Below are positions 1 through 26,749 of a stretch of DNA of 64,000 nt, in pieces. A model generated the notes under the pieces. It did no database searches. It had not been told where the DNA came from and saw nothing but the letters and a program-made list of their open reading frames with translations. The stretch spans positions 124,001-188,000 of the IMG/VR virus record IMGVR_UViG_3300027668_000008. One strand, written 5' to 3'. The position numbers were made by a program, and so were the translations under genes. How positions within the stretch are numbered: the stretch's first letter is position 1; each line of letters begins with the position of its first letter.

Positions 1-131
1 AAAATGTCAACAGGCACGTCAGGCTTATCGAGCTCAGTAGTGCAAATGTATCGTACTTCGCCTCCGGTTTCGACTCCATAATATTTCTCCACTTGATCAG
101 TATCAGTTAAAGGTTCGTGATTAATCTTCAT
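1..131 (-). CDS. Conserved phage hypothetical protein, 5' part only (runs off the window edge)
   Basis: Manual translation from ATG at 131: MKINHEPLTDTDQVEKYYGVETGGEVRYICTTELDKPDVPVDI; start overlaps the stop of the upstream ORF. Confidence 0.7.
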   Translation of the reverse strand, partial: MKINHEPLTDTDQVEKYYGVETGGEVRYICTTELDKPDVPVDI

Positions 132-318
132 TATTCTCTTTATCTATTTTATCCACTGTTTGATGTATTCTGTCATCTGTTATATCAATAACACCAGATT
201 GTTGTAATACGTCTAATGTCGTAGTAACACCGTGTTCTACTCCTGCTTTCCAATTATAATAAGCACAAGCACCTGTAAAGATTATAAACGCACTGCAATG
301 CCAAACTGTTAATACCAT
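121..318 (-). CDS. Small hypothetical protein with N-terminal hydrophobic segment
   Basis: 65-aa ORF with GAGG RBS, packed in operon. Confidence 0.7.
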   Translation of the reverse strand: MVLTVWHCSAFIIFTGACAYYNWKAGVEHGVTTTLDVLQQSGVIDITDDRIHQTVDKIDKENNED

Positions 319-329
319 AACATTACCTC

Positions 330-1358
330 TTAATTGTTAAAAGATTCAAAGAATTTTATACTTGCTAAATTCTTTGCTTTTGATTCTACCATAATATCTG
401 CAAACTCATTAAATGTGGATGCCCAAGTATTTACCGCATTATTCCACATAAAGTCACTATGTCCACGCATCTTGCCTTTTTTGTAACCTTGTTCTAATAA
501 TAATTCCTTATCAGGTAATGTGTTAACATCGTGGTCTATAAGATAGTCAAGTCTACTTACTGAATAATGCATTGCAGGACGTAAGCCACGCCAACTATCT
601 ATTACGCCTTTAAATCTATCATCGGAGGGTTGTATGTATTCACCACTTTTGACCCAGTGATGGTGTATGTCAAGTACGAGTGCGAGGTGCTTGCCAAGTT
701 CGAGACTGTCTTCGATGCCCCACGAGTTTTCGTCGTTTTCAATGGTAATAACATTTCTCGCCTCTTTAGAAAGTCTTGGGAGGACATTAATGATACCGGT
801 TGGACCTTGTCTACCTGATATATGGACATTGCATTTGAAGTCTTGGAACTCCTTGCCGTAGCCCATGAATTTGATGCAATCAACATGATATTCGAACTCC
901 TCTATACTACGTTCTACAACTTCGGGCCTATCACTTGCTAATACAACAAATTGACCAGGGTGCATACTAAGACGTACATCATGTTGTCTGGCAATGTCGC
1001 CTACTTTAATTAAGTTGTCTTCTAAATATTTTTGTACATATGCTTGTTGCCAAAAGTAACGCCAACTAGGTTCTGTGTATGCTGGTAGCAAGTCACTGCC
1101 TAGTCTAAGCATTCTTAGTTCTGGTTGTAATGTACTTACATAGGTAATAAGATTTTTGTACGATTCAATATTATGAACCATAATATCCCAAAGTCGTTGT
1201 TCAGCAACTTCTTTAGTTTGCCTATTAAGCCATGAGATTGTTGTCGACCTACTGTTGTAAGGACGTTGCAGTTCTTCTAATACTTTTTTATTTTGGGTTT
1301 GATCTGCTACCATGTACTTACAAGCGAAACCAACTCTTTTTATATCTTGATTAAACAT
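330..1358 (-). CDS. uvsE: UV DNA damage endonuclease (UvdE/UvsE family)
   Basis: Motifs RVGFACK, MLRLGSDLLP, RLSMHPGQF, TIENDE, LVLDIHHHW, RGHSD. Confidence 0.93.
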   Translation of the reverse strand: MFNQDIKRVGFACKYMVADQTQNKKVLEELQRPYNSRSTTISWLNRQTKEVAEQRLWDIMVHNIESYKNLITYVSTLQPELRMLRLGSDLLPAYTEPSWRYFWQQAYVQKYLEDNLIKVGDIARQHDVRLSMHPGQFVVLASDRPEVVERSIEEFEYHVDCIKFMGYGKEFQDFKCNVHISGRQGPTGIINVLPRLSKEARNVITIENDENSWGIEDSLELGKHLALVLDIHHHWVKSGEYIQPSDDRFKGVIDSWRGLRPAMHYSVSRLDYLIDHDVNTLPDKELLLEQGYKKGKMRGHSDFMWNNAVNTWASTFNEFADIMVESKAKNLASIKFFESFNN

Positions 1359-1407
1359 AATATCCTATACATTAAACTAAACATAACACTATGTTAGCAC
1401 AATTATA

Positions 1408-2037
1408 TTATGTTGTCAACAGTTGATTTTCTAAGTTTTCGTAAGTATCGGCATACGCATTTGGGTGATTTAAAAGACTGTCCGGTGTCCAGTCATTAAC
1501 AAATATAAACTTAACATCGTTGAAGTGTTCAATAATGTGTCCTATTTGTTGGACATCATATCCCATGTCACGTTGCTTTGCAGTTTCTTTTGGATTGTTT
1601 TGTGATCCTGAATAGATACAATTAATTGCACCAAAAGGATTTTTCATTGATCGTTCGCCAGAACCAATAAAATCATAACCAATAATAGTTACAATTTCAT
1701 TTTCTAATGCGGCAAGTAGTATTGCATAAGAACCGGATGTCCAATTCTTTTCTTCATCTTTTTCGTGTGTAATAGTGTAAGGTATTTCTGGTAATACTTG
1801 TAAGTATGGATTCTTAACAATGTTGATTAAGTCAGTTGTTGTAAACAAGTAGGACTTTTTTTGTAAATTGTGTTCCACTGCTTCTTGTAAATGATGTAAC
1901 TTATTACAAACTATATTCTCTACAACAAAGTCTCTGTGAATACTGTTACACCCATATGTAATACCTCTGCCAAAAAGTTTTCGTAAATCAAAATCTTTCC
2001 TACTATTAGCATTACCTATTGCGTAACCAACATCCAT
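1408..2037 (-). CDS. Conserved phage protein, GNxxSR..YGCN Rossmann-like family (glycan-modification associated)
   Basis: True start likely ATG 2037 (TAATG overlap with upstream stop); AIGNANSRKDFDL, TYGCNSIHRDF, IIGYDF motifs. Confidence 0.55.
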   Translation of the reverse strand: MDVGYAIGNANSRKDFDLRKLFGRGITYGCNSIHRDFVVENIVCNKLHHLQEAVEHNLQKKSYLFTTTDLINIVKNPYLQVLPEIPYTITHEKDEEKNWTSGSYAILLAALENEIVTIIGYDFIGSGERSMKNPFGAINCIYSGSQNNPKETAKQRDMGYDVQQIGHIIEHFNDVKFIFVNDWTPDSLLNHPNAYADTYENLENQLLTT

Positions 2038-2954
2038 TATTGAGCTTGTCCAATAATGGCCCAAACTGTGCCACCTAAACAAATCCAACCAACCGGTTGA
2101 CCAACTGCTGGATTACTATTCCATGCAATGTCGCCTTTTTCTCCGGAATGTCCTGGTGTTTCTGTTACTGAAGAATGTCTTGTGCCTGCAAGTACAGGGT
2201 TAGATATTTTTGTTTCACCGTCTTGTGTTAATACAATGTTGTTGTGTGTCGCTGAGCCAATTTCCATATTGCTTTTGGATCTAATCTCAACTGTATGTTG
2301 TTTGCTCTTACCTATATTAAGATTTGTTTCCTCGTCCCATAAGGTTAATGTGCTTGTTGGTTCGTCTGTATTAATGCCAACTCTTTTTGTACTCGATGCG
2401 TATAATGTGTTACCAAGTAATGTTTCACCTACTACAACCAAGTCTGATAAGTTACCAACCGACTTAAGATTACTGTTAATTATAGTTTTAGGCAAACTAT
2501 CGCCTGCTACAAAATCTTGTAATTCTGATAATCCTTGTATGCTATCAGCAGTTAATAACCCTGTTACTGTTAATTTATCTACTGTAATTTCTTGTGCATT
2601 TAAGTTGTTAGTGTTTAAATTTTCTGATGTAATGTCTGGAGAGTGTAATGCGTGTGTTACTTGCACACCATTTGCGTCAACATCTAACTCTGGAGTTGAA
2701 AGTAATTCAGTACTAAGGTGTTTAAAATCGCCAGTAATCATACCAGCGTTCATTCTAAATCCTTCCCAATTAACTGCACTATTGTTAATAGACCCAGTTG
2801 GGAATTCTAAACTATCGATTGTTTCTTGTACAGATTGTTTAACAAATTCTGCGACAGATTCCTTAAGATTTACTTTATTAAGGTTCTCTCGTATTTGTTT
2901 TTCTACAGTTTCACGTATGAATGACTGTAATGCGTTTTGTAGTTCTTGTGACAT
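2037..2954 (-). CDS. Putative virion structural / tail-fibre-like protein
   Basis: Beta-rich repeats, RVGINTDEP motif, C-terminal GDIAWNSNPAVGQPVGWICLGGTVW typical of phage fibre proteins. Confidence 0.55.
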   Translation of the reverse strand: MSQELQNALQSFIRETVEKQIRENLNKVNLKESVAEFVKQSVQETIDSLEFPTGSINNSAVNWEGFRMNAGMITGDFKHLSTELLSTPELDVDANGVQVTHALHSPDITSENLNTNNLNAQEITVDKLTVTGLLTADSIQGLSELQDFVAGDSLPKTIINSNLKSVGNLSDLVVVGETLLGNTLYASSTKRVGINTDEPTSTLTLWDEETNLNIGKSKQHTVEIRSKSNMEIGSATHNNIVLTQDGETKISNPVLAGTRHSSVTETPGHSGEKGDIAWNSNPAVGQPVGWICLGGTVWAIIGQAQ

Positions 2955-2975
2955 TGTTGCCTCTTTGATTTATTA

Positions 2976-3719
2976 TTAAATCTTGGCAACTGCAATATAC
3001 TCGTAACTTCTACTGAATAGGTTTTTGTAAAACAGGCTTTGAGATATTTTAAAATCTGAACAGCCTAAGTCGTGTATATATTTTGCAAGTTGCTTGAAAT
3101 ATAATGTTCTTTTTATTTCAGTTACCTCGGATATTAATTTACCGTTGCTTAACTGATACATTGTTTCGTTGAATTTCTGCTTGTCTGCACGATCCCATGT
3201 TCTATGGCATACAAATACATGACTTGCTTCACCACTATTAATAACCATGGGTGGATCCACTAAACGGTCCACTGACTTCATATTTTTGAAATCTTTAATA
3301 GTAGTTACTAATGCTTTTCTAGTATAACCATGTGCATCAGCAATAATTTGTTTCTGAGTATCCTCAGTTCCGTATCTCGTAAAATAACTATCCAATGCTA
3401 ATGTAACATCAAACTTTTGATCTGTAATTTCATCTTTAGTTAATACTGTAACGTGCTTTAAATCTTCATGGTTACGGATAAATTCCGATTCATGATCATC
3501 TCTACACAATACATGATACTTAAAAGCATCTACGTTGTCTTTGCATAATGCCCAAAGAATAGGATTGAAGCCCAACACCAATGCAGTGCTATATTCGTCA
3601 GTTGTAAAATCGCCCATTGTATCTCTTATGATCTGAGCTTTTAATTCTACTAACTTTAGAAATTTAGTTTTATCCTGCTTATATAGATTGTCAACAGTAT
3701 TGTACCAATACATTTTCAT
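2976..3719 (-). CDS. Hypothetical protein, possibly degenerate SAM-methyltransferase fold
   Basis: 247-aa ORF; ALVLG and FDVTLAL resemble MTase motifs but the glycine loop is degenerate. Confidence 0.4.
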   Translation of the reverse strand: MKMYWYNTVDNLYKQDKTKFLKLVELKAQIIRDTMGDFTTDEYSTALVLGFNPILWALCKDNVDAFKYHVLCRDDHESEFIRNHEDLKHVTVLTKDEITDQKFDVTLALDSYFTRYGTEDTQKQIIADAHGYTRKALVTTIKDFKNMKSVDRLVDPPMVINSGEASHVFVCHRTWDRADKQKFNETMYQLSNGKLISEVTEIKRTLYFKQLAKYIHDLGCSDFKISQSLFYKNLFSRSYEYIAVAKI

Positions 3720-3784
3720 TTTTATCCTTTTGGATTGTTTTATACAATGTATTTATCAATACTATTGCGTAGCCGTATAAGACT

Positions 3785-3967
3785 CTACTTTTCGTACTTA
3801 CTAGTGTCTTTGGCTAATAGTAAACAGTCTGCTTGGATTGTTTGTATAGCAACATCAATCTCGTCTTTAGACGATTTAATTGGACCGTACTTCATATCTC
3901 GTAACTTATCCGATTGTACCTTAATGCTGTCTATCTTTTCACAGAACTGACTTATTTTATGCAACAT
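3785..3967 (-). CDS. Small hypothetical protein downstream of tRNA cluster
   Basis: 60-aa ORF with AGGAG RBS. Confidence 0.7.
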   Translation of the reverse strand: MLHKISQFCEKIDSIKVQSDKLRDMKYGPIKSSKDEIDVAIQTIQADCLLLAKDTSKYEK

Positions 3968-3984
3968 AGCATTTCTCCTTAATT

Positions 3985-4061
3985 TGGCGCACCCTACAGG
4001 ACTCGAACCTATTACCTCTGGTTCCGCAAACCAACGCTCTATCCAGATGAGCTAAGGGTGC
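3985..4061 (-). tRNA. tRNA-Arg, anticodon GCG
   Basis: GCACCCT/AGGGTGC acceptor stem, A20, anticodon arm TTGGT-TTGCGGA-ACCAG, TTCGAGT T-loop, encoded CCA. Confidence 0.9.
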
Positions 4062-4072
4062 CTTTATAGTTT

Positions 4073-4148
4073 TGGTGGAGGATACAGGGATCGAACCTGC
4101 TACCTCCTGAATGCAAATCAGGCGCTCTCCCAGATGAGCTAATCCCCC
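4073..4148 (-). tRNA. tRNA-Ala, anticodon TGC
   Basis: GGGGGAT/ATCCTCC stem with G3:U70, arm CCTGA-TTTGCAT-TCAGG, encoded CCA. Confidence 0.95.
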
Positions 4149-4181
4149 AAAACTAAATTCTTTTTGTAACATACTAATACT

Positions 4182-4210
4182 ATAATATAACATTCAACGA
4201 GTGTTGTCAA
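4182..4210 (-). promoter_or_regulatory. sigma70-type promoter for tRNA-Ala/tRNA-Arg
   Basis: TTGACA-N17-TATTAT. Confidence 0.75.
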
Positions 4211-4222
4211 GAGCCATAAAAG

Positions 4223-4312
4223 TGGCGGAGAGACTGGGATTTGAACCCAGGAAAGAGTTGCCCCTTTGCCGGTTTAGTAAACCGGTGCTTTCAACCGCTC
4301 AGCCATCTCTCC
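4223..4312 (-). tRNA. tRNA-Ser (long variable arm), anticodon ACT
   Basis: GGAGAGA/TCTCTCC stem, G73, long variable arm AAAG-GGGCAACT-CTTT, arm CCGGT-TTACTAA-ACCGG, encoded CCA. Confidence 0.88.
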
Positions 4313-4321
4313 GGAGTATTT

Positions 4322-4525
4322 TTATTTAGGTACGATTTCAAAACACTTAACTAGTGCCTGCATATCAGTCAAACCAGCCGCTTTACATTCTGCGTATAAT
4401 TTCTTTCTAGCGCCGACTACTTCGTCTGGTGCTACTTTTATACTTTGCATCCTATTTGATTTTGCATTAGGATTCATGCCACGATATCTGGTATTATGTT
4501 TATTATTTTTGTTACGATCATTCAC
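4322..4525 (-). CDS. Small basic hypothetical protein between tRNAs
   Basis: 67-aa ORF, GTG start. Confidence 0.55.
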   Translation of the reverse strand: MNDRNKNNKHNTRYRGMNPNAKSNRMQSIKVAPDEVVGARKKLYAECKAAGLTDMQALVKCFEIVPK

Positions 4526-4541
4526 GCAATTTATTTTTCTG

Positions 4542-4617
4542 TGGTGCCGCTTCCCGGATTCGAACTGGGCACCTACTGATTACAAATCAGTTGCTCTACC
4601 AAATGAGCTAAAGCGGC
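4542..4617 (-). tRNA. tRNA-Thr, anticodon TGT
   Basis: GCCGCTT/AAGCGGC stem, arm ACTGA-TTTGTAA-TCAGT, encoded CCA. Confidence 0.95.
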
Positions 4618-4695
4618 GTTGATATTATTTACCTGTTAAAATTTTCAATGTCTTATTATTGAATACAGTACAAGTATTTGTTTCATTATAACGAA

Positions 4696-4899
4696 CTATT
4701 GCTCGATTGTCAACTCTTTTTCTGCGTCTTGCCAAAAATCTTTTAACGAGTCTAATTTCTCTGTTAAGTCTTGTATTTTAATTCTTGTTTCTGCTTCTTC
4801 TTTTACATCTTCTATTAGTGGAAGATTGTCTTTCATTTCTGCTATACGCCTGGTATATTCAGATATGAGTGTCTTGTATAGTGTCTTTGATTGTTTCAT
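4696..4899 (-). CDS. Small coiled-coil hypothetical protein
   Basis: 67-aa ORF. Confidence 0.65.
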   Translation of the reverse strand: MKQSKTLYKTLISEYTRRIAEMKDNLPLIEDVKEEAETRIKIQDLTEKLDSLKDFWQDAEKELTIEQ

Positions 4900-4920
4900 T
4901 TTGTGATTATTCTTTAAAGG

Positions 4921-5817
4921 TTATGCTAGTTTGAACATTCCGCCAAAGATGTTATCAACAAATGTACTGTGGTCAATCTGCTCGTAACTTGTGCAGTTCT
5001 CGGGTAGAAACCCTCGATGCCACATATAAACAAAACTAGCAACTACACAGGCGTTAGCATAATGCCAACTGTTAAGTGTTCTTCGTCCAGGTATCAGTAA
5101 ATGACTGTGTTTTACTAAATCTTCTGTTTGATACTCTGAACTACTTGTAACCGTAGTATGGAACAATGTTTCTGTGTGCCAATCAACTTTACTAGCATCA
5201 ACGTTGTCGGTATCTGCTATCCAGTTTGTTTGTATGTCGATATTATCATCTCCTAGCCATGAATCAATTTCACTAGCGAAAAAATATTTATTTTGTAACT
5301 TAATAAGTTTAGGTTGCCCTAATACGTTATTCATTACTTCTTGGTAATCTTCTAATGACAATCCAGGTAAAGCATTTTCACCTGTTTCACTAGTTTTAGA
5401 AATTCCTGTAAAATGTTTGATAGACTTTACATTCTCGTTTACATTAACAATACGTTTAATCCACATATCCGTTGCCGCATATTGTAAATTAATATCATCT
5501 AAAATAATGTTATTGTGCGGTGCTACGTCATCTTGTAATGCAAATGTACAAAGTAACGGTATTCCGAATTCTGAACATAAGCCTACTATATTGTCATCTT
5601 CATAGTTTGGGTTTGTACAAACTACAATGTCAGCACCTCTGACAATATCATGCATTGTTAGTGTTGATGTAAATTTTCTAACATATGCTGGGTTCAAATA
5701 ATTATCACCAAAACAAGTAACTTGAATTTCATCATCGAACTGTACTGCATTAATTTCAAGTAATGTTTTTACGGCATATAAATTTTTGCCATCGCCTACT
5801 ATGTGTATATTAATCAT
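4921..5817 (-). CDS. Rossmann-fold protein, saccharopine dehydrogenase / homospermidine synthase-like (divergent)
   Basis: N-terminal IHIVGDG, DIVRGADIVVCT and CSEFGIPLL resemble the NAD(P)-binding domain of this family. Confidence 0.4.
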   Translation of the reverse strand: MINIHIVGDGKNLYAVKTLLEINAVQFDDEIQVTCFGDNYLNPAYVRKFTSTLTMHDIVRGADIVVCTNPNYEDDNIVGLCSEFGIPLLCTFALQDDVAPHNNIILDDINLQYAATDMWIKRIVNVNENVKSIKHFTGISKTSETGENALPGLSLEDYQEVMNNVLGQPKLIKLQNKYFFASEIDSWLGDDNIDIQTNWIADTDNVDASKVDWHTETLFHTTVTSSSEYQTEDLVKHSHLLIPGRRTLNSWHYANACVVASFVYMWHRGFLPENCTSYEQIDHSTFVDNIFGGMFKLA

Positions 5818-6121
5818 TGAACCTCTCCCTAACGTGTTGATAAAAAGTGTCTAATTCTCCACCAAACTGTCCGGTTAGATGGTCTACTGCTTGTAGGCAA
5901 TATTCTGTATTATTGTTGTTCAATTCAATTACAAAGTCTTCGTGCAACTTTGTCCAGTTTTCTAACTGTGGTAAACTGTCAAGGCTTAGTTTAGCAGTAT
6001 CTACAACTGCATATAGTGTAAGGTCTGTGTTCTTTTCTTTCACAGTAACCGTGTCTAGTTCAAGCACGGTGTACCTGTCTCTTAATGCTTCTGCTTGTTT
6101 TTTACCATATACTATGTGCAT
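5810..6121 (-). CDS. Stand-alone homologue of the adenylate cyclase C-terminal region
   Basis: MHIVYGKKQAEALRDRYTVLELDTVTVKEK aligns by eye with LTLLVGESSVSDEYTFIELDKIAVKGK of the cyclase at 9030-11063; the helical tail (LHEDF..ELDTFYQHVRER vs EHDKY..ELHNYYEVMSER) also aligns; ATG at 6121. Confidence 0.65.
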   Translation of the reverse strand: MHIVYGKKQAEALRDRYTVLELDTVTVKEKNTDLTLYAVVDTAKLSLDSLPQLENWTKLHEDFVIELNNNNTEYCLQAVDHLTGQFGGELDTFYQHVRERFND

Positions 6122-6201
6122 CTTTGCCTCTCTTGAATAACTTATTATACTAGTACTTATCTTCTTCAAAGATAGGTAAATAATAATGTAAGTTAAGTAT
6201 T

Positions 6202-6230
6202 ATAATAACAGAATTATGTTGTTATGTCAA
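6202..6230 (-). promoter_or_regulatory. sigma70-type promoter for the 6121-4696 operon
   Basis: TTGACA-N17-TATTAT. Confidence 0.7.
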
Positions 6231-6239
6231 GGAGAATGT

Positions 6240-6518
6240 ATGGATATTTTTAAACTCATAGCAGAACTAGGTTTCCCTATTGCAGGTGCTTTAGCGGCTG
6301 GCTTCTTTGTCTTTACAACAGTAAAATTTATACTTGCAAGTGTAACTAGTAGTATTCAAGGGCTAAAAGGTATTGTAGGCAGTTTAGACAACCGTGTACA
6401 AACAATGAATAACGACTTGGTTAAAATGGATTCATTAATAAGTTATGCATTTGGCGTTAAACCAAATGTAGACAGAATTGCCGCTAATGAAGGCAAAGAA
6501 GACGCAAGGAGAGACTAA
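6240..6518 (+). CDS. Small membrane protein with GFPI motif, paralogue 1 (one TM plus coiled coil)
   Basis: ATG 6240 with GGAGA RBS; LGFPIAGALAAGFFVF, then LDNRVQTMNNDL. Confidence 0.8.
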   Translation: MDIFKLIAELGFPIAGALAAGFFVFTTVKFILASVTSSIQGLKGIVGSLDNRVQTMNNDLVKMDSLISYAFGVKPNVDRIAANEGKEDARRD

Positions 6519-6802
6519 TGGCAGATATAGATATTAACCAAACAGTGGAAGCACCACCCGTTGATGATGGTTGCATTACTGAATGTTTTGGCGAAGCAGA
6601 CAGAGTTGGTGTAGAGTTCACTGACGCCGGTGTAGTTAAAAATATTACAATAGATGATAGTGTTTCCGGTATAGGTGATGTACAAGCAGGTATAGAATTT
6701 ATCTATAATATGCGAGAACATATGGTAGATATTAGTGTAGCCACAGTATATGCAATAACTGTGTATGCTCTTGTTTTATGGATTAAAAGGAAGTTAAGAT
6801 AG
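6518..6802 (+). CDS. Small acidic protein with C-terminal TM helix
   Basis: TAATG coupling; C-terminal hydrophobic helix followed by KRKLR. Confidence 0.75.
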   Translation: MADIDINQTVEAPPVDDGCITECFGEADRVGVEFTDAGVVKNITIDDSVSGIGDVQAGIEFIYNMREHMVDISVATVYAITVYALVLWIKRKLR

Positions 6803-6814
6803 TGATATTTAAAC

Positions 6815-7135
6815 ATGATAGTAACAGATTTAATTAGCGATTACGGATTTCCTATTGTTGCCGCGGTGGGCATGGGATATTTCGTATATTATATATGGAA
6901 ATGGGTAACTATTGAAGTTAAACCTTTAATTGGCGCAACTAGTGGAACACTTATAGGGTTAATTGACCGTATAAGAATGCTCGATAACGACATGATAAGA
7001 TTAACACAAAAGATTAACATGGTTATAGAGTTCAAAGAAGAATACGAAAAACTAACGGGGAAGAAACTCGCAATGACTGTCGATGACATCGAATCGATTA
7101 AGAAAGAGAACTTAAAGAATGCTAAAAAGAAATAA
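6815..7135 (+). CDS. Small membrane protein with GFPI motif, paralogue 2
   Basis: YGFPIVAAVGMGYFVYYIW, then LIDRIRMLDNDMIRL; clearly similar to 6240-6518. Confidence 0.8.
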   Translation: MIVTDLISDYGFPIVAAVGMGYFVYYIWKWVTIEVKPLIGATSGTLIGLIDRIRMLDNDMIRLTQKINMVIEFKEEYEKLTGKKLAMTVDDIESIKKENLKNAKKK

Positions 7136-7268
7136 CAACTGGCTTAATAGTCAAAATACTGCTACTAAAATATATTTAAAATCACAACCTATATGGCATG
7201 ATAAAGATATGCTTATCGTAATTACTGTTGCTTTATTGTCTGGATTTCTTGTAGGACTTGCAGTTTAA
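7119..7268 (+). CDS. 49-aa membrane protein (QPIWHD motif), not in the ORF track
   Basis: Manual translation MLKRNNNWLNSQNTATKIYLKSQPIWHDKDMLIVITVALLSGFLVGLAV; overlaps the end of 6815-7135. Confidence 0.65.
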   Translation: MLKRNNNWLNSQNTATKIYLKSQPIWHDKDMLIVITVALLSGFLVGLAV

Positions 7269-8241
7269 CAATTGGTAAGAATTTCCATTGTAATACGTTA
7301 TTATCTTTACAATAGTCTTCAAACCTATGTCTAATTGCAACAACATTATCTGCACCATATTTAATTCTAGTTGGCAAGTATGTAAAGATATTAGAACGCC
7401 ATATGCTAGAACCAGGCTTTATCCAGGAAAAATCTTCTATAATATCCTTATTAAGGAATTCAACTGGAATAGATTCAAACCAATCCCAAAAATCTTCTCT
7501 GTCTATACTATCAGGTAACTGATTTAATACCGTTTCTTTATTGGTATAAATTTCTTTGTAGTACTCGATACTGTGTTTGCTTATATCATAAAACACAACT
7601 GTGTCAGGTATTACGTTATTTTTATAATATTCAGTTAATGTTATAAATGGTTTGTTACCAGCACACAATAAGTAAAGTGTTTTATCATAAGAGTAAAATT
7701 TATCGTATTGTTCTTTGCTACAATCTTTGTACACAGGTTCTGTGTTTTCCACATATAACCTATCTAAGTCTAAATTATAGTTGTGTTCGGTTTCCCAATC
7801 ATCATCAGTTTTGACAAATGTATCCAATCCAACTTCTTTAGAAAACCATTTTATTGTTGTATTAACAGGAACATCTTGTACAAACGTATCAGATCCTGAC
7901 ACAAACCAATCATGATTTAATCGTATAACAAAACAAAAACTATTCATGTTTTTAAATGCAATAATATCCGGTTCATCTTTAATTGCTTCTTTTACAAAAT
8001 CTAACATTAATTCGTTACGCAAATATGTACCTTCTCGAACGATAAGTGCGTAATCTGCCTTGTTTCTGAGGTTAGTAAGAGTACTGTCTAATGTACCAGT
8101 AATTTTAAATATATCAATATGTTCGTTATCTGCTACAGTATTATCATCTCTGATCAATCCCATATCAAATATGTTTGACCAAGTTATGTTGTGTAAGTAC
8201 TCGTCACTTGTACAATTTAATGCTACTGCTACTAAATTCAT
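7222..8241 (-). CDS. Hypothetical protein
   Basis: 339-aa ORF coupled to the upstream hydroxylase. Confidence 0.7.
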   Translation of the reverse strand: MNLVAVALNCTSDEYLHNITWSNIFDMGLIRDDNTVADNEHIDIFKITGTLDSTLTNLRNKADYALIVREGTYLRNELMLDFVKEAIKDEPDIIAFKNMNSFCFVIRLNHDWFVSGSDTFVQDVPVNTTIKWFSKEVGLDTFVKTDDDWETEHNYNLDLDRLYVENTEPVYKDCSKEQYDKFYSYDKTLYLLCAGNKPFITLTEYYKNNVIPDTVVFYDISKHSIEYYKEIYTNKETVLNQLPDSIDREDFWDWFESIPVEFLNKDIIEDFSWIKPGSSIWRSNIFTYLPTRIKYGADNVVAIRHRFEDYCKDNNVLQWKFLPIVKLQVLQEIQTIKQQ

Positions 8242-8864
8242 ATCAACTTCCTGTAGTTTTCATAAGCCTGTTTCTTAAACTCTGTAGTTTTGCCACCATG
8301 TAAAATAATATGATATCTATGTTCATTGCTATTATTACGAACACTGTGCTTGTTACTTAAATCTAACCATGCACCTTTATTTTGTTTAAATGGTACAACT
8401 CCGACATCCTCCATAACAAATTCACATCCTTCTGGATTGTTAATTGCAATGTTGATAGGACCTAATCTACTTTTATCATAATCTCTATGTGATTCAATAT
8501 AACCACCGGGTGCTACAGACATAATTCTAATTCTATCAAAGTCTATAAAATAATTTTGTTCTAACAACCATTGTTTAAGTGAAGGTATACTGTTACTTGC
8601 GTTAGTCCAATCAAAGACTGCATCTTCTTCTTGTATATCATAAAACATTGGAGCATTAGTGAATTCATCACCTTGCCCGTGCATAACTAATGATGACCAA
8701 CCTTTTGATTGGTCTTCTCTGTGATTATAAAAGTTATCTTGTGCTTGTGATATTTCTTGTAAAATATTTTCTACAGGCATATTGACATCGAACATTAAAT
8801 AAGGTAACTTACTATCTGTTCTTAATTCAATTGGATTTTTACATTCTTTGTTAAAACTTAACAT
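8238..8864 (-). CDS. Aspartyl/asparaginyl beta-hydroxylase-like 2OG-Fe(II) oxygenase
   Basis: IRIMSVAPGGYIESHRDY (HxD) and HSVRNNSNEHRYHIILHG; likely start ATG 8864 (ORF extends to 8927). Confidence 0.8.
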   Translation of the reverse strand: MLSFNKECKNPIELRTDSKLPYLMFDVNMPVENILQEISQAQDNFYNHREDQSKGWSSLVMHGQGDEFTNAPMFYDIQEEDAVFDWTNASNSIPSLKQWLLEQNYFIDFDRIRIMSVAPGGYIESHRDYDKSRLGPINIAINNPEGCEFVMEDVGVVPFKQNKGAWLDLSNKHSVRNNSNEHRYHIILHGGKTTEFKKQAYENYRKLI

Positions 8865-8883
8865 TTGTCGATTGTCTTTTCTT

Positions 8884-9021
8884 TTATTCTTGTTCGCCGT
8901 TTGCTTTACTTTTTGCGTAGGCGGCATCTGCTCTCATTTGTGTTGCTATTCGCAGTTGCATATAATCTCTTAAAGGTGGCTTAGTCTTTGGTTTATCTTT
9001 TCGTGCAGAACCCAGACTCAA
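8884..9021 (-). CDS. Possible 45-aa basic peptide (TTG start)
   Basis: Manual translation MSLGSARKDKPKTKPPLRDYMQLRIATQMRADAAYAKSKANGEQE fills the intergenic gap. Confidence 0.35.
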   Translation of the reverse strand: MSLGSARKDKPKTKPPLRDYMQLRIATQMRADAAYAKSKANGEQE

Positions 9022-9029
9022 CGAATCTT

Positions 9030-11063
9030 TTATTTGCTTGTTGCGATGAATACTCCGTCCCATTGTTTTGTACCTTTTCTTTTTAGCTCATGGGCCCGTT
9101 CAGACATTACTTCATAGTAATTATGAAGCTCTTCAGGGCATACACTTTGTAATTTGGAAATTTGATTAATCGCTAGATCCCACTTGGAATCTCTATATAA
9201 CTGCAAATATTTATCATGTTCCTTGACGTAATTAACTGCACACTCACTAAACAAAGCAGTATAAATGGTAGCCGGTACTGTCTTGCCCTTAACTGCTATT
9301 TTATCTAGTTCTATGAATGTGTATTCGTCGGATACTGAACTTTCACCAACTAACAATGTTAAACCGTACTCTTTACTTTGCCCCTCTAGTCTTGCCGCTA
9401 AATTAACACAATCACCCAAAACTGAGTAGTCAAAACGTTGATTAGACCCCATATTACCTACCACAGCACTACCTGTGTTAATACCAACACCAATTTTAAT
9501 AGGCATTAATCCTTCGGATTCTAATTCTTTATTAAGTTTTCTTAATGCAACAAACATCTCATCAGCAGTTTTAATTGCTAATTCACGTTGTTTAGGAACA
9601 TCTAAAGGTGCGTTCCAAAATGCCATAAGTGCATCACCAATATACTTGTCTACTGTGCCTTCGTTTTTCATAACAATATCTGTCATAGGTGTCATGTACC
9701 TATTAATTAAAGAAGTTAACCCTTGTGGATTTGTTTTGTATTGTTCACTAATAGGAGTAAATCCTCTAATGTCACTAAACAATAAAGTTAACTCTCTTGT
9801 ATCGCCACCTAACTTTAATAGTTCTGGATTTTGTTGTAATTTCTTAACCATAGCAGGTGCTAGATAGTGCTCAAACTGTTTTTTAATTTGTTGTTTTAAA
9901 CTAAACTCTTTTACAAATCTATTAAACACTGCATGAAAGCCTGTAAGTACAAATACTATTAATGGCATTGTTACATCGAGCAAATACAAATAGTGTTGCC
10001 ATGCATACAATGAACCATATACTAATCCTGCACTAACACTTAATATCGTAAGTCCAACAATATAATATGGTAATCTAACACTTATTAAAATAATAAGGAG
10101 ACCTAACGTAACAGAAGTTAGTAATTCAACTAGCACGGCCCAATACGGGCGTTGTATCTGGTCTCCGTCGATAACTGTTTGTAGTGTTACTGCCGAAGGT
10201 ATATAATTATATTTAGGACCAGTAGGTGTAGCAATTACTCCACCGATGCCTTCTGCTGTCGAACCTATAATAACTGTTTTGCCTGCGAATAAAGAAAAGT
10301 CGTCACTACTTGCACTAATTGTTTCAAACTCTTTATTCCAACGTAACCATATTTGTCCATTGGGATCTGTACTAATAATTGGATATCCCGGAACACGAAT
10401 TTTATCTATTCCGCCTTGGTTTGCTTTAATTTGATAACTTGGTTTACCTGTACTAACTCTAATAACTTCGATTGCTATTGATGGGTATGTGTTAGTGCCT
10501 ACTCTCATAATTAAAGGAACACGTCTTACAACACCATCTATCTCATTAGGTGTATTTAGAACACCAACGCCGTCTGCATTTAAGCCTAGTAACGGAATAG
10601 GTCCTAACATACCGGGCCATTCGAACAAATAAGGTACTGCATCACCTATTGTTGCAACTCCTCTTGTTACCGCATTTTTATTTACTTTTAAACTTCCTAC
10701 TTGTGCAATAACAATCCCATTGCCGGCTATCGATTCAACAAATGCTTGGTCACCGCCTAATCTATCATCTTCACTAAACAGTATAGGTATTACAATTACA
10801 CCTGCTCCTGCTTCACGCAACTTCCAAATAAGTTCTGCTAGAACATCACGTTTCCAGGGCCACTGTCCGTATTTTTCAATAGATGCTTCATCTATTGTTA
10901 CAATACCAATGTCGTTGGATACAACCGGAGTATCGGTTTGTTGTAGTAAATCAAACTGTTTAAGTCTCAATATTTCAACTATACTACTATTGCCGTAATG
11001 GAAGAAGGTTAGAACTGCCAATGTTACAAAGGCAGTTAACCAATGCGTTAAATATTTTTTCAT
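9030..11063 (-). CDS. CHASE2-domain class III adenylate cyclase
   Basis: N-terminal TM; CHASE2 motifs IDEASIEKYGQWPWKR and DGVVRRVPL; three TMs; catalytic LFSDIRGFT, DKYIGDALMAF, VGNMGS, DYSVLGDCVNLAARLEG, IAVKGK. Confidence 0.95.
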   Translation of the reverse strand: MKKYLTHWLTAFVTLAVLTFFHYGNSSIVEILRLKQFDLLQQTDTPVVSNDIGIVTIDEASIEKYGQWPWKRDVLAELIWKLREAGAGVIVIPILFSEDDRLGGDQAFVESIAGNGIVIAQVGSLKVNKNAVTRGVATIGDAVPYLFEWPGMLGPIPLLGLNADGVGVLNTPNEIDGVVRRVPLIMRVGTNTYPSIAIEVIRVSTGKPSYQIKANQGGIDKIRVPGYPIISTDPNGQIWLRWNKEFETISASSDDFSLFAGKTVIIGSTAEGIGGVIATPTGPKYNYIPSAVTLQTVIDGDQIQRPYWAVLVELLTSVTLGLLIILISVRLPYYIVGLTILSVSAGLVYGSLYAWQHYLYLLDVTMPLIVFVLTGFHAVFNRFVKEFSLKQQIKKQFEHYLAPAMVKKLQQNPELLKLGGDTRELTLLFSDIRGFTPISEQYKTNPQGLTSLINRYMTPMTDIVMKNEGTVDKYIGDALMAFWNAPLDVPKQRELAIKTADEMFVALRKLNKELESEGLMPIKIGVGINTGSAVVGNMGSNQRFDYSVLGDCVNLAARLEGQSKEYGLTLLVGESSVSDEYTFIELDKIAVKGKTVPATIYTALFSECAVNYVKEHDKYLQLYRDSKWDLAINQISKLQSVCPEELHNYYEVMSERAHELKRKGTKQWDGVFIATSK

Positions 11064-11068
11064 ACTAG

Positions 11069-11074
11069 TATTTA
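11069..11074 (-). promoter_or_regulatory. TAAATA late-type promoter box directly upstream of the cyclase
   Basis: TAAATA 6 nt before the ATG; the same box recurs before many genes. Confidence 0.6.
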
Positions 11075-11094
11075 TTTAAAGGAAATTTGGGGTG

Positions 11095-12549
11095 CTAATC
11101 TGATTGTGTAAAGGTCGTTGTTCCACAACCAGCGGCATTAGTGCAACTTTGTGTTAAACTATATGTCTTATCTGAACTACCATCTTGGTGTAAATCCAAT
11201 GTACTTGAATACCCAGACATATTAATTGTTGCGGCATGGTCGCCTGATCCATCTTGGTCAACTGAAACAGTTTGGTTACTTCCAACTGTAATGTCTTGAA
11301 AGTGTGTTCCTGTTCCGGCTTGGTCTAAATCTAATGTGTTAGAACTTCCGTTAATATCCACAAACATCATTTTATCGCCATCGTCATTTTGTTGTAAATT
11401 TATATTGTTACTATTTCCTGCAATGTCGACATCCATAAAATGACCCAAGTTACCAACGGCTCCGTCTTCTTCTTGAGTGAAAGTTCCTGTATTACTATTA
11501 CCAACTACATTTAATCTTAAATCATGGTCACCATCATCATCGATATTGTCACCTTGTCGTATTGTCATAGTGTTACTATTTCCGTTAATATCTAGCAAAA
11601 CAGTATTGCCATCACTAAATGATCCTGAGTTATTACCCTGTGTAATTGATAGTGTATTATCGTCGCCAGTTATTTCTGCGTTGTCGATACTGCTGGAAGT
11701 TGTTCCTAAACCTGCAACTAAATTATCATTGTCGTATTGTATAATGTCTATGTTTGCATTATTACCACTTTGTGTAATATAAATTCCGTTGCCACTGTGT
11801 GTTATTCCTCTTGTAGTTGATCTTAAATTAGTTTGTGCAGTTGTAGGTTCTGAAGTATATGATGCTGGACTGAATACGCCTTCCTCTTCAAGTGTTTCTC
11901 CTAAAAAGACATACATTCTTGCTGAACGAGTTGTGTTAGCATTATTAAATTGTGCCTGGTCTAAAGTGATAATTAATTTACCACCATTACTACCATAACC
12001 ATATACTGCCCAAGATTTCCAGCCACTAAGGCCTGATGCTGTATTTGACGCTATCGCCGTACCACCCGATTGCATTGAAAAAAGATTTCTTGTTACCCAT
12101 GAATTTGAAACGGTATATTGAGAACCATTAGCGTGAGAAGTATAGTTTGCCTCACCATTGTATATTGAGATAGCACCTACACTTAATTTACTTTCAACAA
12201 GCGATTCAATGCTCAGCGTTCTAGCGCCATCATGGTCACCATTACCAGCAATTAAAACTGTGCCACCTGCACTAATGTAAGTTTCATATGCTGTCTTACA
12301 GGTACCACCACAACTGTTATTACCTGCTATGTTAATGTGTAAATCTTTACCAGTAAAATCACTTAAAGTAACTGAACCACTATTTGTGCCTGTAACTGTA
12401 AACCCATGACCCTCTAACTCACCTTTTACTTTATTGTACATATTGGTATCAGTATAGTTTATATGAGCTGTTTCGGCAAATGCTTGTATAGGTAATACTA
12501 ATAATAAACTAATTAGACTGATTAATAGTGATCTGATTAACACCGGCAT
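11095..12549 (-). CDS. Large secreted protein: N-terminal globular domain plus C-terminal curlin-like repeats
   Basis: Signal peptide; repeats of type I-x-G-x-x-N-x-x-x-I-x-Q (ITGDDNTLSITQ, INGNSNTMTIRQ, VVGNSNTGTFTQ, IAGNSNNINLQQ, INGSSNTLDLDQ). Confidence 0.8.
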   Translation of the reverse strand: MPVLIRSLLISLISLLLVLPIQAFAETAHINYTDTNMYNKVKGELEGHGFTVTGTNSGSVTLSDFTGKDLHINIAGNNSCGGTCKTAYETYISAGGTVLIAGNGDHDGARTLSIESLVESKLSVGAISIYNGEANYTSHANGSQYTVSNSWVTRNLFSMQSGGTAIASNTASGLSGWKSWAVYGYGSNGGKLIITLDQAQFNNANTTRSARMYVFLGETLEEEGVFSPASYTSEPTTAQTNLRSTTRGITHSGNGIYITQSGNNANIDIIQYDNDNLVAGLGTTSSSIDNAEITGDDNTLSITQGNNSGSFSDGNTVLLDINGNSNTMTIRQGDNIDDDGDHDLRLNVVGNSNTGTFTQEEDGAVGNLGHFMDVDIAGNSNNINLQQNDDGDKMMFVDINGSSNTLDLDQAGTGTHFQDITVGSNQTVSVDQDGSGDHAATINMSGYSSTLDLHQDGSSDKTYSLTQSCTNAAGCGTTTFTQSD

Positions 12550-13600
12550 CTCCTAACTGTACATTATCTACACCAACAAAATTCTGCTTTAATGTTATGT
12601 TATAACTGTAATCTCTATCTAATCGTAGTTCCATAAAATTACCTGCACTATCTTCTTTAATAATAAGGTAACTAGGATCGTTTGTAAATGTTATTCCTGT
12701 TGTTTCGTCGAATCCAATTTTAAAACCATTCCTAGGATCAAATGCTTGTTTAAGTTTTTTGCTTAATTCTGCATTTAATACGACTAGTAAGTCTTGTAAA
12801 AAATCTTGTAATAAGAAGTCAATGTCTAATTCGTTTGCAAGTTCCTCATTTGATTCTTCTAATAAATCTTCATCTAAATCGTTAAATTCTAAAAAGTCAA
12901 TATCTAATGCACTTGATACATCTGATAGTTGCTCTGCTAGTTCTATTGCTTCTTGTAAATCCTTGGGCTTTTGTACGATTAACAAGTTGTTAATCATATT
13001 AGCATCTAAATCCAGTATAATAGGTTTTAAAGGTTTAGATTCAAATGTTGTAACTACTGTTGTTTGAAATGCTTGATTCATTATAACAAATCCTGCATCT
13101 GTTTCAACTTCAATTTCTCCTACATAACAGTTGCCGTTGCTATCGCAACTCGGTAGTAAAATTATAAGACTGCTTCCAATCTCATCTACTGTCATCGTGA
13201 AGTCAGTGCCTCTTACTCCAATGACTGCCGTAGGTGTTTTGATCTTTACATTTTGTTTAAACTTTTTTCCTATTTGCCCACTTGCATACCTAACTGTGCC
13301 TAAACTGGCTTTGATAGATAGTGATCCAATATCATTTGCAGGGTCATAGACAAATTCATCGATTATTACATTACTGTGTGGCGTAATTTCTAATTTAGTA
13401 TCGTCTATAAATTCTATATTTTGTTTATGCTTAAATGTTTCTATTCGGTCCATAGAGAATATATCAGAATCCACATCACCTTGTTCAGTTGTGTCTTCTC
13501 TATAAATCTTACTTGGTCCGTCCGATTTAGTAATTTTACCTATACTGGCAAATCCACTAGTCGGAAGAAAGCAGATTAGTATAACACAGAGCCACTTCAT
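12509..13600 (-). CDS. Secreted FecR-domain protein
   Basis: Signal peptide; FIDDTKLEITPHSNVIIDEF, GTVRYASG, IKTPTAVIGVRGTDF. Confidence 0.85.
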   Translation of the reverse strand: MKWLCVILICFLPTSGFASIGKITKSDGPSKIYREDTTEQGDVDSDIFSMDRIETFKHKQNIEFIDDTKLEITPHSNVIIDEFVYDPANDIGSLSIKASLGTVRYASGQIGKKFKQNVKIKTPTAVIGVRGTDFTMTVDEIGSSLIILLPSCDSNGNCYVGEIEVETDAGFVIMNQAFQTTVVTTFESKPLKPIILDLDANMINNLLIVQKPKDLQEAIELAEQLSDVSSALDIDFLEFNDLDEDLLEESNEELANELDIDFLLQDFLQDLLVVLNAELSKKLKQAFDPRNGFKIGFDETTGITFTNDPSYLIIKEDSAGNFMELRLDRDYSYNITLKQNFVGVDNVQLGDAGVNQITINQSN

Positions 13601-14292
13601 TAGTCGCTCTGCGTAATGTCTATGTCAGAATTGGTGCCAACTGTTGTTAATTGTATTTTGTTGTCATAAATTCCACTTTGTGTAATGTCCACTGTAGTAC
13701 CTTCACCTGTATGATTATGTGTTAAACTATGTCCTGCACTATCTCCTGCGCCTGACATTATATAGTTCGCCGTGTTATCTACTGAACTGCCTAATGCATC
13801 ATTATCCATATCGATGTCTGCATCTGCGTTCGCGGCATTTACTGTTAGTGTGATAGTATCTTCGTTGCTAGTTGCTAAATCTATTGTTCCTACAAAGTTA
13901 GCCGATGATGCACTGGCTCCAATAGCAACTGTTACTGTTGCGTCATCGCCGACTACATCTATGCTCATACTTACTGTTTCACAATTAGAACTTGCACAAG
14001 TTAAAGCAACTGTGTTAGAGTTACCTGTTAAATCTATATTACCTGTGTAAGTAGTACCGTTAATAACTGTAGACACAACGTTACTGTTACCAACTTGATC
14101 AATATTAAATGTCATGCTGTTACCAGTTAAGGATATCGCTGTACTGCTGTTACCTGCCACGTTGTTCTGTCCGTCCTGTGTTATATCCAAGTTTAAATTA
14201 TTACCACTTTGTGTAATATAGATATCATTAGCATACACCGAACTTATAGAACAAACCAGAAACAAGAGCACATAAACTATTTTATTTGTCAT
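13600..14292 (-). CDS. Secreted curlin-like repeat protein
   Basis: Signal peptide then NDIYITQSGNNLNLDITQDGQNN; Gly/Asn/Gln beta-solenoid repeats. Confidence 0.8.
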   Translation of the reverse strand: MTNKIVYVLLFLVCSISSVYANDIYITQSGNNLNLDITQDGQNNVAGNSSTAISLTGNSMTFNIDQVGNSNVVSTVINGTTYTGNIDLTGNSNTVALTCASSNCETVSMSIDVVGDDATVTVAIGASASSANFVGTIDLATSNEDTITLTVNAANADADIDMDNDALGSSVDNTANYIMSGAGDSAGHSLTHNHTGEGTTVDITQSGIYDNKIQLTTVGTNSDIDITQSD

Positions 14293-15355: not shown

Positions 15356-15358
15356 CCA

Positions 15359-26340: not shown

Positions 26341-26479
26341 AAAATTACTTGGTACTTTTTATATATCTGTATATAGTTCGTCACGTTCACTGAAACGTGT
26401 GCAATTAGAAAGTGTATTTCCATGTTACCAGTGTATGCTTGTAACAATCCTTTGTCACTAATGTTTCTAACTTTGGTAT

Positions 26480-26745: not shown

Positions 26746-26749
26746 AGTA

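What the first reader, a model, noticed from the sequence alone, without database searches (positions are those of the whole stretch)
3985..4061. tRNA-Arg with G34 (GCG) instead of the usual A34-to-I34 (ACG)
The sequence shows anticodon loop TTGCGGA on an Arg body (A20, G73). Most proteobacteria read CGU/CGC/CGA with TadA-edited ICG. A GCG isoacceptor would not need TadA and has a different anticodon from the host tRNA. Inference: it evades an Arg-tRNA anticodon nuclease or replaces host tRNA-Arg(ICG) lost during infection.
Basis: partly seen in the sequence, partly recalled or inferred. Interest (0 to 1): 0.6.

Follow-up and report, generated by a model that had tools for sequence, protein, structure and literature searches.

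The report
Marine jumbo phage tRNA-Arg with GCG anticodon
A large marine phage carries a genuine, evolutionarily conserved arginine tRNA whose first anticodon base is G rather than the A-to-inosine used by almost all proteobacteria; it can read CGU/CGC without the host editing enzyme TadA, but such tRNAs are common in uncultured phages, so this is a modest rather than a striking finding.

Summary
Window 3985-4061 (minus strand) is a 77-nt tRNA-Arg with loop UUGCGGA (anticodon GCG), A20, G73 and an encoded CCA. It is not an assembly error. Three independent marine metagenome assemblies show the same bases. All 22 metagenome contigs and 13 IMG/VR contigs with this tRNA backbone and loop type have G34, while the stems change by compensatory substitutions. 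The window lies in a 306.7-kb marine jumbo myophage contig with eight tRNAs, each matching a preferred A/U-rich codon of the phage, and an alpha-type two-piece tmRNA. Homologous tRNAs in Methylophilales phage Melnitz and Agrobacterium phage Atu_ph07 carry ACG, so G34 is a derived or alternative state within a phage tRNA lineage. No deaminase-family (TadA-like) match was found in the contig. In 401 sampled Pseudomonadota genomes, GCG never appeared without ACG. However, GCG is native to several other bacterial phyla and occurs in at least 120 IMG/VR contigs. The most likely role is TadA-independent supply of CGU/CGC decoding. Nuclease evasion is untested and has no specific support. The host is unidentified. 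The neighbouring tRNA-Ser(ACU), with A34, is at least as unusual.

The parts
3985..4061 (-). tRNA-Arg(GCG), 77 nt with encoded CCA; loop UUGCGGA; A20, C35, G36, G37, G73
   Evidence: ARAGORN; Rfam RF00005 59.2 bits; sequence; covariation; independent assemblies
4025..4027 (-). anticodon G34 (4027) C35 (4026) G36 (4025)
   Evidence: Sequence read on the minus strand. No variant listed at these places in four runs. G34 in 22 of 22 metagenome contigs of this backbone.
4073..4148 (-). tRNA-Ala(UGC), 11 nt upstream of tRNA-Arg and in the same transcription unit; the same Ala-Arg order occurs in Agrobacterium phage Atu_ph07
   Evidence: ARAGORN; Rfam 61.9 bits; Atu_ph07 comparison
4182..4210 (-). 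sigma-70-type promoter-like site TTGACA-17-TATTAT (11 of 12) upstream of tRNA-Ala/tRNA-Arg
   Evidence: Consensus scan. This is a pattern match only; function is inferred.
4223..4312 (-). tRNA-Ser(ACU), class II, loop UUACUAA, with A34 in place of the usual G34
   Evidence: ARAGORN; Rfam 59.4 bits; recurs in at least 5 sequence families of viral contigs
4542..4617 (-). tRNA-Thr(UGU), first gene of the four-tRNA cluster
   Evidence: ARAGORN; Rfam 67 bits
4685..4713 (-). sigma-70-type promoter-like site TTGACA-17-TATAAT (12 of 12) upstream of tRNA-Thr
   Evidence: Consensus scan. This is a pattern match only.

Best explanation
This is a functional, phage-encoded arginine tRNA with a genomically encoded G at the wobble position. 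It belongs to an eight-tRNA set in a roughly 307-kb marine jumbo myophage. Each tRNA in the set matches a codon the phage uses heavily. This one pairs with CGC and wobbles with CGU, which is by far the phage's commonest CGN codon. It is probably transcribed with tRNA-Ala from a consensus sigma-70-type promoter. It should be charged by the host ArgRS (A20, C35 and G36 are present) and probably methylated at G37 by host TrmD (G36-G37). Because base 34 is G, it needs no A-to-I editing by host TadA. It therefore works as soon as it is made, whatever the state of the host's modification machinery during infection. CGA and CGG are left to host tRNAs. It descends from the same phage tRNA lineage as the ACG-bearing tRNAs of Melnitz and Atu_ph07. 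One A34G transition in an alpha-type loop (UUACGGA) gives its loop. Shown here: the gene, its conservation, its relatives, the codon match, and no TadA-like match in the contig. Inferred: expression, charging, m1G37, and the idea that TadA independence is the selected benefit.
For: It is a real tRNA under purifying selection. G34 is fixed in 22 of 22 metagenome and 13 of 13 IMG/VR contigs that have this backbone and loop type, despite six anticodon-stem variants. Homologues carrying ACG exist: Melnitz has identical D and T arms, and Atu_ph07 has the same Ala-Arg order and nearly the same anticodon stem. Codon use per 1000 is CGT 10.5, CGC 1.3, CGA 3.2, CGG 0.5 and AGA 18.2. All eight tRNAs pair with the top codon of their family or box. 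No dCMP/cytidine-deaminase or MafB19-type deaminase match was found in the contig. Consensus promoters lie upstream. Native alpha-type ACG loops CUACGGA and UUACGGA exist. Phage contigs with Arg-GCG also often carry tRNA-Ile(UAU), another anticodon that bypasses an essential host anticodon-modifying enzyme (8 of 107 loci). That UAU bypasses TilS is my own knowledge.
Against: Unedited A34 can also read CGN codons, and TadA is dispensable in B. subtilis (PMC10454642), so the benefit of avoiding TadA may be small. Many cultured phages keep ACG (Melnitz and Atu_ph07 confirmed by ARAGORN; the many coliphage and vibriophage tRNA-Arg hits were not typed), so TadA dependence is not generally avoided. 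CGA use is similar in the GCG phage and in ACG-bearing Melnitz (3.2 against 4.5 per 1000), so codon use does not explain the switch. The host is unknown, so the claim that this differs from the host rests on sampling of Pseudomonadota only. The contig is 87% complete, so a deaminase gene could lie in the missing part.
Confidence: 0.55

Rival explanations
1. Counter-defence. G34, with U32 and G37, makes the phage tRNA invisible to a host (or phage) anticodon nuclease that recognises the ACG/ICG loop of host tRNA-Arg. Arginine decoding would then survive tRNA depletion.
For: There is precedent for phage tRNAs that escape tRNA-directed defences through anticodon-loop changes (PMC10264068, PMC11555353). 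The loop differs from gamma-type host loops (CUACGAA) at positions 32, 34 and 37. The neighbouring tRNA-Ser also has a non-host wobble base. G34 is strictly conserved while the stems drift.
Against: No phage-defence nuclease specific for tRNA-Arg(ICG) turned up in my literature searches; colicin D, a bacteriocin tRNase cited in PMC10264068, is the only tRNA-Arg-directed nuclease I am aware of. The loop is the standard loop of native GCG tRNAs rather than a special variant. No RNA ligase, RtcB or EndoV family was found in the contig. Strict conservation of an anticodon is expected for any working tRNA.
Confidence: 0.15
2. Host matching. The host belongs to a lineage that natively decodes CGY with tRNA-Arg(GCG) and lacks the ACG/TadA route. 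The phage simply carries a copy of the host-type tRNA.
For: A GTDB-wide scan finds native tRNA-Arg(GCG) with the same loop in many phyla, including the marine SAR202, SAR324 and Nitrospinaceae, and in some roughly 1-Mb 'Gammaproteobacteria' MAGs that showed a GCG match and no ACG match to the pattern used. The best native GCG tRNAs are 88% identical to the phage tRNA, as close as Melnitz's ACG tRNA. GCG is frequent in IMG/VR.
Against: The capsid's nearest relatives all infect Proteobacteria. The tmRNA is the alphaproteobacterial two-piece type. The curli/cyclase module and this tRNA family are shared with SAR11 and OM43 phages. In 401 sampled Pseudomonadota, GCG never occurs without ACG. Native GCG users usually pair it with tRNA-Arg(UCG) (PMC3711424), which this phage lacks.
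Confidence: 0.15
3. Near-neutral variant. A34G arose once in a phage tRNA-Arg. G34 and I34 both read CGU and CGC, so the change carried little cost or benefit. It persists by ordinary purifying selection on a working anticodon.
For: A single transition separates alpha-type UUACGGA from the phage loop. ACG and GCG phages have similar CGN usage. Both states exist in related phages.
Against: GCG tRNAs occur on several unrelated backbones in viral contigs, which suggests repeated origin or long retention. There are 0 A34 alleles among 22 + 13 contigs of this backbone with the UU-type loop, even though the reverse transition would be equally easy.
Confidence: 0.14
4. Artefact or pseudogene: an assembly or sequencing error at base 34, or a decayed tRNA copy.
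For: None found.
Against: Identical sequence appears in independent assemblies from different studies. 35 further contigs have G34. The cloverleaf is perfect and covaries. The Infernal score is high.
Confidence: 0.01

Closest known systems
tRNA-Arg of Methylophilales (OM43) phage Melnitz, gene 147 (MZ577097, 74645-74721)
   Same: 77 nt with identical D arm, variable loop and T arm and an encoded CCA. 84% identical overall. Carried by a marine phage that shares the curli/CHASE2-cyclase module and an alpha-type two-piece tmRNA.
   Different: The anticodon is ACG with loop CUACGAA, a TadA substrate with A37. The acceptor and anticodon stems differ by compensatory changes. Melnitz is a 141-kb Kyanoviridae-type myophage, not a jumbo phage. 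The paper describes both Melnitz Arg tRNAs as TCT, but ARAGORN reads this one as ACG.
tRNA-Ala(UGC)/tRNA-Arg(ACG) pair of Agrobacterium jumbo phage Atu_ph07
   Same: Same gene order, Ala then Arg a few bases apart. Anticodon stem CUGGU/ACCAG against UUGGU/ACCAG. G37 is present. About 79% identical tRNA-Arg in a cultured jumbo phage of an alphaproteobacterium; its capsid relationship to this phage was not tested here.
   Different: A34 and C32 (loop CUACGGA). The T arm differs. The host is a soil alphaproteobacterium.
Native bacterial and archaeal tRNA-Arg(GCG): Mycoplasma Pneumoniae group after tadA loss (PMC3711424), and Chloroflexota, Patescibacteria, Spirochaetota and others found here
   Same: Same anticodon and the same loop, U/C-U-G-C-G-G-A with G37. 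Bacterial Arg D arm with A20.
   Different: Those are chromosomal and usually the only CGY reader, paired with tRNA-Arg(UCG) in a TadA-less setting. This one is phage-borne and unaccompanied by UCG. It sits in a phage whose relatives infect ACG/TadA-using Proteobacteria.
Nuclease-evading phage tRNAs (the T5 and mycobacteriophage cases in PMC10264068 and PMC11555353)
   Same: A phage-encoded tRNA whose anticodon loop differs from the presumed host isoacceptor while still decoding the same codons.
   Different: In those cases the anticodon is kept and neighbouring loop or stem bases change, and a cognate nuclease is known. Here the wobble base itself differs, no cognate nuclease is known, and nothing was tested.

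Membership tests
Bacterial-type elongator tRNA (Rfam RF00005) | Cloverleaf with 7/4/5/5-bp stems, 7-nt anticodon loop with U33, and a T loop | tested here: met
   59.2 bits against gathering score 29. ARAGORN call. 21 of 21 pairs are formed in all six distinct homologues, and 7 pairs covary.
tRNA-Arg (ArgRS substrate) | Identity elements A20, C35 and G36 or U36. These come from established knowledge of E. coli ArgRS recognition. | tested here: met
   The D loop AUCUGGAUA carries A20, and C35 and G36 are in the loop. Actual charging is not testable here.
TadA substrate (tRNA-Arg ACG to ICG) | Adenosine at position 34 in a U33-A34-C35-G36 loop | tested here: not met
   Base 34 is G in the window and in all 35 related contigs with this loop type.
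TrmD (m1G37) substrate | G36-G37 dinucleotide in the anticodon loop | tested here: met
   The loop UUGCGGA has G36 and G37. The methylation itself is not testable with these tools.
Native 'GCG + UCG, no TadA' decoding of the CGN box | tRNA-Arg(GCG) accompanied by tRNA-Arg(UCG) in the same genome | tested here: not met
   The only Arg tRNAs in the 306.7-kb contig are GCG and UCU. By contrast, 19 of 107 other GCG-bearing viral loci do carry UCG.
Codon-compensating phage tRNA | The anticodon reads codons that the phage uses frequently | tested here: met
   CGT is 10.5 per 1000 and 68% of CGN codons; CGT plus CGC make 76%. Comparison with host codon use was not possible because the host is unknown.
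Anticodon-nuclease-evading phage tRNA | A cognate host nuclease that cleaves the host isoacceptor but spares the phage tRNA | not testable with these tools
   The host is unknown. No tRNA-Arg(ICG)-specific defence nuclease was found in the literature searched. No RNA-repair genes were found in the contig.

The most novel reading that the evidence does not exclude
The Arg-GCG gene may be one half of a deliberate rewiring of wobble bases in marine phage tRNA sets. G34 appears exactly where bacteria depend on TadA-made inosine. Unmodified A34 appears where bacteria always use G34: Ser-ACU here, and Asp-AUC, Tyr-AUA and Ser-AGA in other viral contigs. This would give the phage a decoding set with anticodon loops unlike any host tRNA. 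Such a set would be independent of host anticodon-modifying enzymes and insensitive to anticodon-loop-directed tRNA depletion, whether by host defences or by the phage's own host shut-off.
Probability: 0.15. Interest if true: 0.7.

Novelty: new member of a known kind. Interest (0 to 1): 0.38.

Why it matters
Phage tRNAs are now seen as both codon suppliers and counter-defence tools. A wobble-G arginine tRNA is conserved across a diversified group of abundant marine phages whose relatives infect bacteria that use inosine. This shows that phages can swap a modification-dependent anticodon for a modification-free one. If the pattern is general, together with A34 tRNAs such as Ser-ACU, it would indicate which host tRNA-modifying enzymes or tRNA-targeting activities limit infection in the ocean. 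It would also affect tRNA-based host prediction. In itself the gene is an ordinary working tRNA, and similar genes are frequent in viral metagenomes.

Tried and rejected
(1) Assembly error is rejected.

(2) A phage-encoded TadA was sought with PF00383 and PF14437. Neither was found.

(3) Phage RNA repair or an inosine-directed nuclease was sought with Rnl1, Rnl2, RtcB and EndoV families. None was found. The Rnl1 search also rang in no control genome, so it is uninformative.

(4) Host identification failed. Five small Pseudomonadota genomes gave at most 79% identity to the tRNA over near its full length. 151 sampled genomes gave at most 88% identity to the phage tRNA-Ala over its full length.

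(5) The Melnitz supplementary tables were searched for tRNA lists and nothing was held.

(6) The closest DNA relatives among cultured phages share only tRNA-length matches.

(7) I first took the loop to differ from its ACG ancestor at three positions. This was revised after finding alpha-type ACG loops with G37 and U32; one transition suffices.

(8) Codon-usage contrast between GCG and ACG phages shows no clear CGA difference.

(9) Neighbouring ORFs (window 121-8241) have no tRNA-related Pfam or PHROG hits.

(10) The large protein searches, structure prediction and complex prediction were not used, because no claim here rests on a protein.

Full report
OBSERVATION. The stretch 3985-4061 is a tRNA gene on the minus strand. 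ARAGORN calls it tRNA-Arg with anticodon gcg (same call on the whole contig). Rfam's tRNA model scores it 59.2 bits against a gathering score of 29. Read 5'-3' on the minus strand, it has a 7-bp acceptor stem and a D arm with loop AUCUGGAUA, which carries A20. The anticodon arm is UUGGU / UUGCGGA / ACCAG. It also has a 5-nt variable loop, a T arm, discriminator G73 and an encoded CCA. G34 is window base 4027.

NOT AN ERROR, AND UNDER SELECTION. The region is held by at least 14 marine or seawater metagenome runs from more than ten studies. Contigs assembled independently from three of them cover the tRNA without any difference inside it. These are X2 record 10, X4 record 17 (7,015 nt; its three differences lie at 3258, 3739 and 3860) and X7 record 26.

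A scan of IMG/VR for the same D and T arms with either purine at position 34 gave 24 contigs, 13 with GCG and 11 with ACG. The ACG copies are all identical to the Melnitz tRNA and have loop CUACGAA. The GCG copies keep UUGCGGA unchanged, yet they have four different, fully paired anticodon stems and two acceptor variants.

A scan of metagenome contigs for this backbone with loop UU-R-CGGA gave 22 contigs. All have G34, with six anticodon-stem variants and further compensatory acceptor changes. One of these contigs is the 306,714-bp source record itself. On six distinct sequences, all 21 cloverleaf pairs are formed in every sequence. Seven pairs change on both sides, including four of the five anticodon-stem pairs, and no shuffle out of 500 reaches this.

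CONTEXT. The window is bases 124,001-188,000 of a single 306,714-bp IMG/VR virus contig. The contig has 35.9% G+C and is judged 87% complete.

Its major capsid protein is closest to jumbo myophages of Proteobacteria: Sinorhizobium phage Phosso at 65%, Vibrio phage 2.275.O and Pseudomonas phage PA5oct at 61%, and Escherichia phage 121Q at 59%. Yet it shares features with the SAR11 phage HTVC008M and the OM43 phage Melnitz. These are a CsgG / curlin-repeat / FecR / CHASE2-cyclase module at about 50% amino-acid identity, and with Melnitz a permuted alpha-type tmRNA.

The contig has eight tRNAs. Gln-UUG, Leu-UAA, Trp-CCA and Arg-UCU lie outside the window. Inside it, in order on the minus strand, are Thr-UGU, Ser-ACU, Ala-UGC and Arg-GCG. 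Two near-perfect sigma-70-type promoter-like sites precede tRNA-Thr (12 of 12) and tRNA-Ala/Arg (11 of 12). Each tRNA pairs with the phage's most used codon of its family or box: CAA 83%, TTA 50%, AGA 49%, GCA 60%, ACA 54% and AGT 49%. CGT is the top CGN codon. Per 1000 codons, CGT is 10.5, CGC 1.3, CGA 3.2 and CGG 0.5.

RELATIVES OF THE tRNA. Melnitz gene 147 is 84% identical and has the same D arm, variable loop and T arm, but it reads ACG. The Melnitz paper (PMC9004378) reports it as more than 90% identical to OM43 host tRNAs.

The cultured jumbo phage Atu_ph07 has tRNA-Ala(UGC) followed directly by tRNA-Arg(ACG). That tRNA has loop CUACGGA and almost the same anticodon stem as here. Native Pseudomonadota tRNA-Arg(ACG) genes show loops CUACGAA, CUACGGA and, once, UUACGGA. 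A single A34G transition in the last type therefore gives the phage loop.

By a pattern scan, none of five cultured jumbo phages (Phosso, 2.275.O, PA5oct, 121Q, Atu_ph07) has GCG. Protein comparison shows the GCG tRNA in the same phage (L025, 97-100% amino-acid identity), in a syntenic relative (L013, 69%), and in more distant contigs (L020 at 48%, L023 at 35%, and the group with stem UAUGU). It is therefore an old, retained feature of a diversified marine phage group.

HOW UNUSUAL IS GCG? In 401 evenly drawn Pseudomonadota genomes, 360 match an Arg D-arm-plus-loop pattern with either purine at position 34. At most 8 have a GCG-type match, and each of those also has an ACG match. The pattern is blind to 41 genomes.

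Outside that phylum GCG is not rare. The hits include Chloroflexota (including SAR202), Patescibacteria, Spirochaetota, Planctomycetota, Armatimonadota, SAR324, Nitrospinaceae and a few roughly 1-Mb 'Gammaproteobacteria' MAGs. In the 80 loci examined, nearly all tRNA-Arg(GCG) genes have loop UUGCGGA or CUGCGGA. The literature already records GCG replacing ACG in Mollicutes that lost tadA, together with UCG (PMC3711424).

The hits have several unrelated backbones and often lie in multi-tRNA clusters of large contigs. I found no paper describing phage tRNA-Arg(GCG). This is a limited library search, not proof of absence.

MECHANISM. The following comes from established tRNA biology and was not tested here. 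G34 pairs with C and wobbles with U, so the tRNA reads CGC and CGU, which make up 76% of the phage's CGN codons. ArgRS identity elements are present. G36-G37 is the TrmD motif. G34 removes the need for TadA.

No cytidine/adenosine-deaminase-family match was found in the phage contig, so an ACG tRNA would depend on host TadA. The best-supported reading is therefore a codon-supplying tRNA that is independent of host wobble editing.

The weak points are these. Unedited A34 can decode CGN, and TadA is dispensable in B. subtilis (PMC10454642). Many phages keep ACG (Melnitz, Atu_ph07). CGA usage does not differ clearly between GCG and ACG phages.

The nuclease-evasion idea cannot be tested here and has no specific support. 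The loop is the standard GCG loop. No Arg(ICG)-specific defence nuclease turned up in the literature searched. No RNA-repair or EndoV family was found in the contig.

Host matching remains possible because the host is unidentified. The proteobacterial affinities of the capsid, the tmRNA and the shared gene modules argue against it, as does the lack of a companion tRNA-Arg(UCG).

VERDICT. The gene is a new member of a known kind, a phage tRNA with an anticodon that is uncommon in cultured phages of Proteobacteria but frequent in uncultured viral contigs.

The neighbouring tRNA-Ser(ACU) recurs on at least five unrelated backbones in viral contigs. It appears alongside other A34 anticodons: Asp-AUC, Tyr-AUA and Ser-AGA. 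This makes the cluster more interesting than the Arg gene alone and motivates the novel case stated separately.

Noticed in passing
window 4223-4312 (-): tRNA-Ser with anticodon ACU (loop UUACUAA), where bacteria use GCU. AGT is the phage's commonest Ser codon: 32 per 1000 overall and 37-39 per 1000 in the 210-300 kb block of the contig. Ser-ACU recurs on at least five unrelated backbones in IMG/VR contigs, two of which also carry Arg-GCG. Other A34 anticodons (Asp-AUC, Tyr-AUA, Ser-AGA, Cys-ACA) occur in such clusters.
   Followed up: partly
window 26442-26799 (-): Permuted two-piece tmRNA of the alphaproteobacterial type, with tag peptide ANNNYQPEMALAA (ARAGORN; Rfam RF04321 112.7 bits and RF01849 107 bits). 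Melnitz and the viral contig L020 carry related ones. No glutamine riboswitch reached the gathering score in the window.
   Followed up: partly
window 9030-15808 (-): A gene module of CHASE2-adenylate/guanylate cyclase, a curlin-repeat protein, a FecR-domain protein, a further curlin-repeat protein and CsgG. It is syntenic with the 'curli' module of Pelagibacter phage HTVC008M and Methylophilales phage Melnitz at about 50% amino-acid identity, although the capsid places this phage among jumbo myophages.
   Followed up: partly
window 4073-4149: In marine runs the phage tRNA-Ala region is matched without differences by short contigs of very high depth (about 860-970, against 4-42 for the phage). 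At least one of these runs on into the 3' end of a tRNA-Ile, which is the rRNA spacer of a very abundant marine bacterium. This is a possible host or source clue. The best match in 151 sampled Pseudomonadota genomes was only 88% over the full tRNA.
   Followed up: partly
L001:39818-39894 (Melnitz MZ577097, 74645-74721): ARAGORN reads this Melnitz tRNA-Arg as ACG. The Melnitz paper describes both of the phage's Arg tRNAs as TCT.
   Followed up: yes
window 3029-3367, 5152-5350, 5405-5611: Contigs from a marine metatranscriptome run (X15) are identical to phage ORF sequence. The phage may have been transcriptionally active in that sample, though DNA carry-over cannot be excluded.
   Followed up: no
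window 330-1358 (-) and 8238-8927 (-): A UvdE-type UV-damage endonuclease (Pfam E 5e-40) and an Asp/Asn beta-hydroxylase-family protein lie near the tRNA cluster.
   Followed up: no
L003, L004, L007, L011, L016, L026 (about 1 kb from their Arg-GCG genes); L258, L267, L274: ARAGORN calls an odd 100-nt 'tRNA-Glu(CTC)' about 1 kb downstream of Arg-GCG in several related viral contigs. It also calls suppressor-like tRNAs (anticodons TTA, CTA, TCA) in other viral contigs fetched by the Ser scan.
   Followed up: no
G002, G003, G004 (loci L032, L070, L108): Three roughly 1-Mb MAGs labelled 'uncultured Gammaproteobacteria' show a tRNA-Arg(GCG) match and no ACG match to the pattern used. They may be proteobacterial lineages, or mislabelled bins, that decode CGY without inosine.
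   Followed up: no
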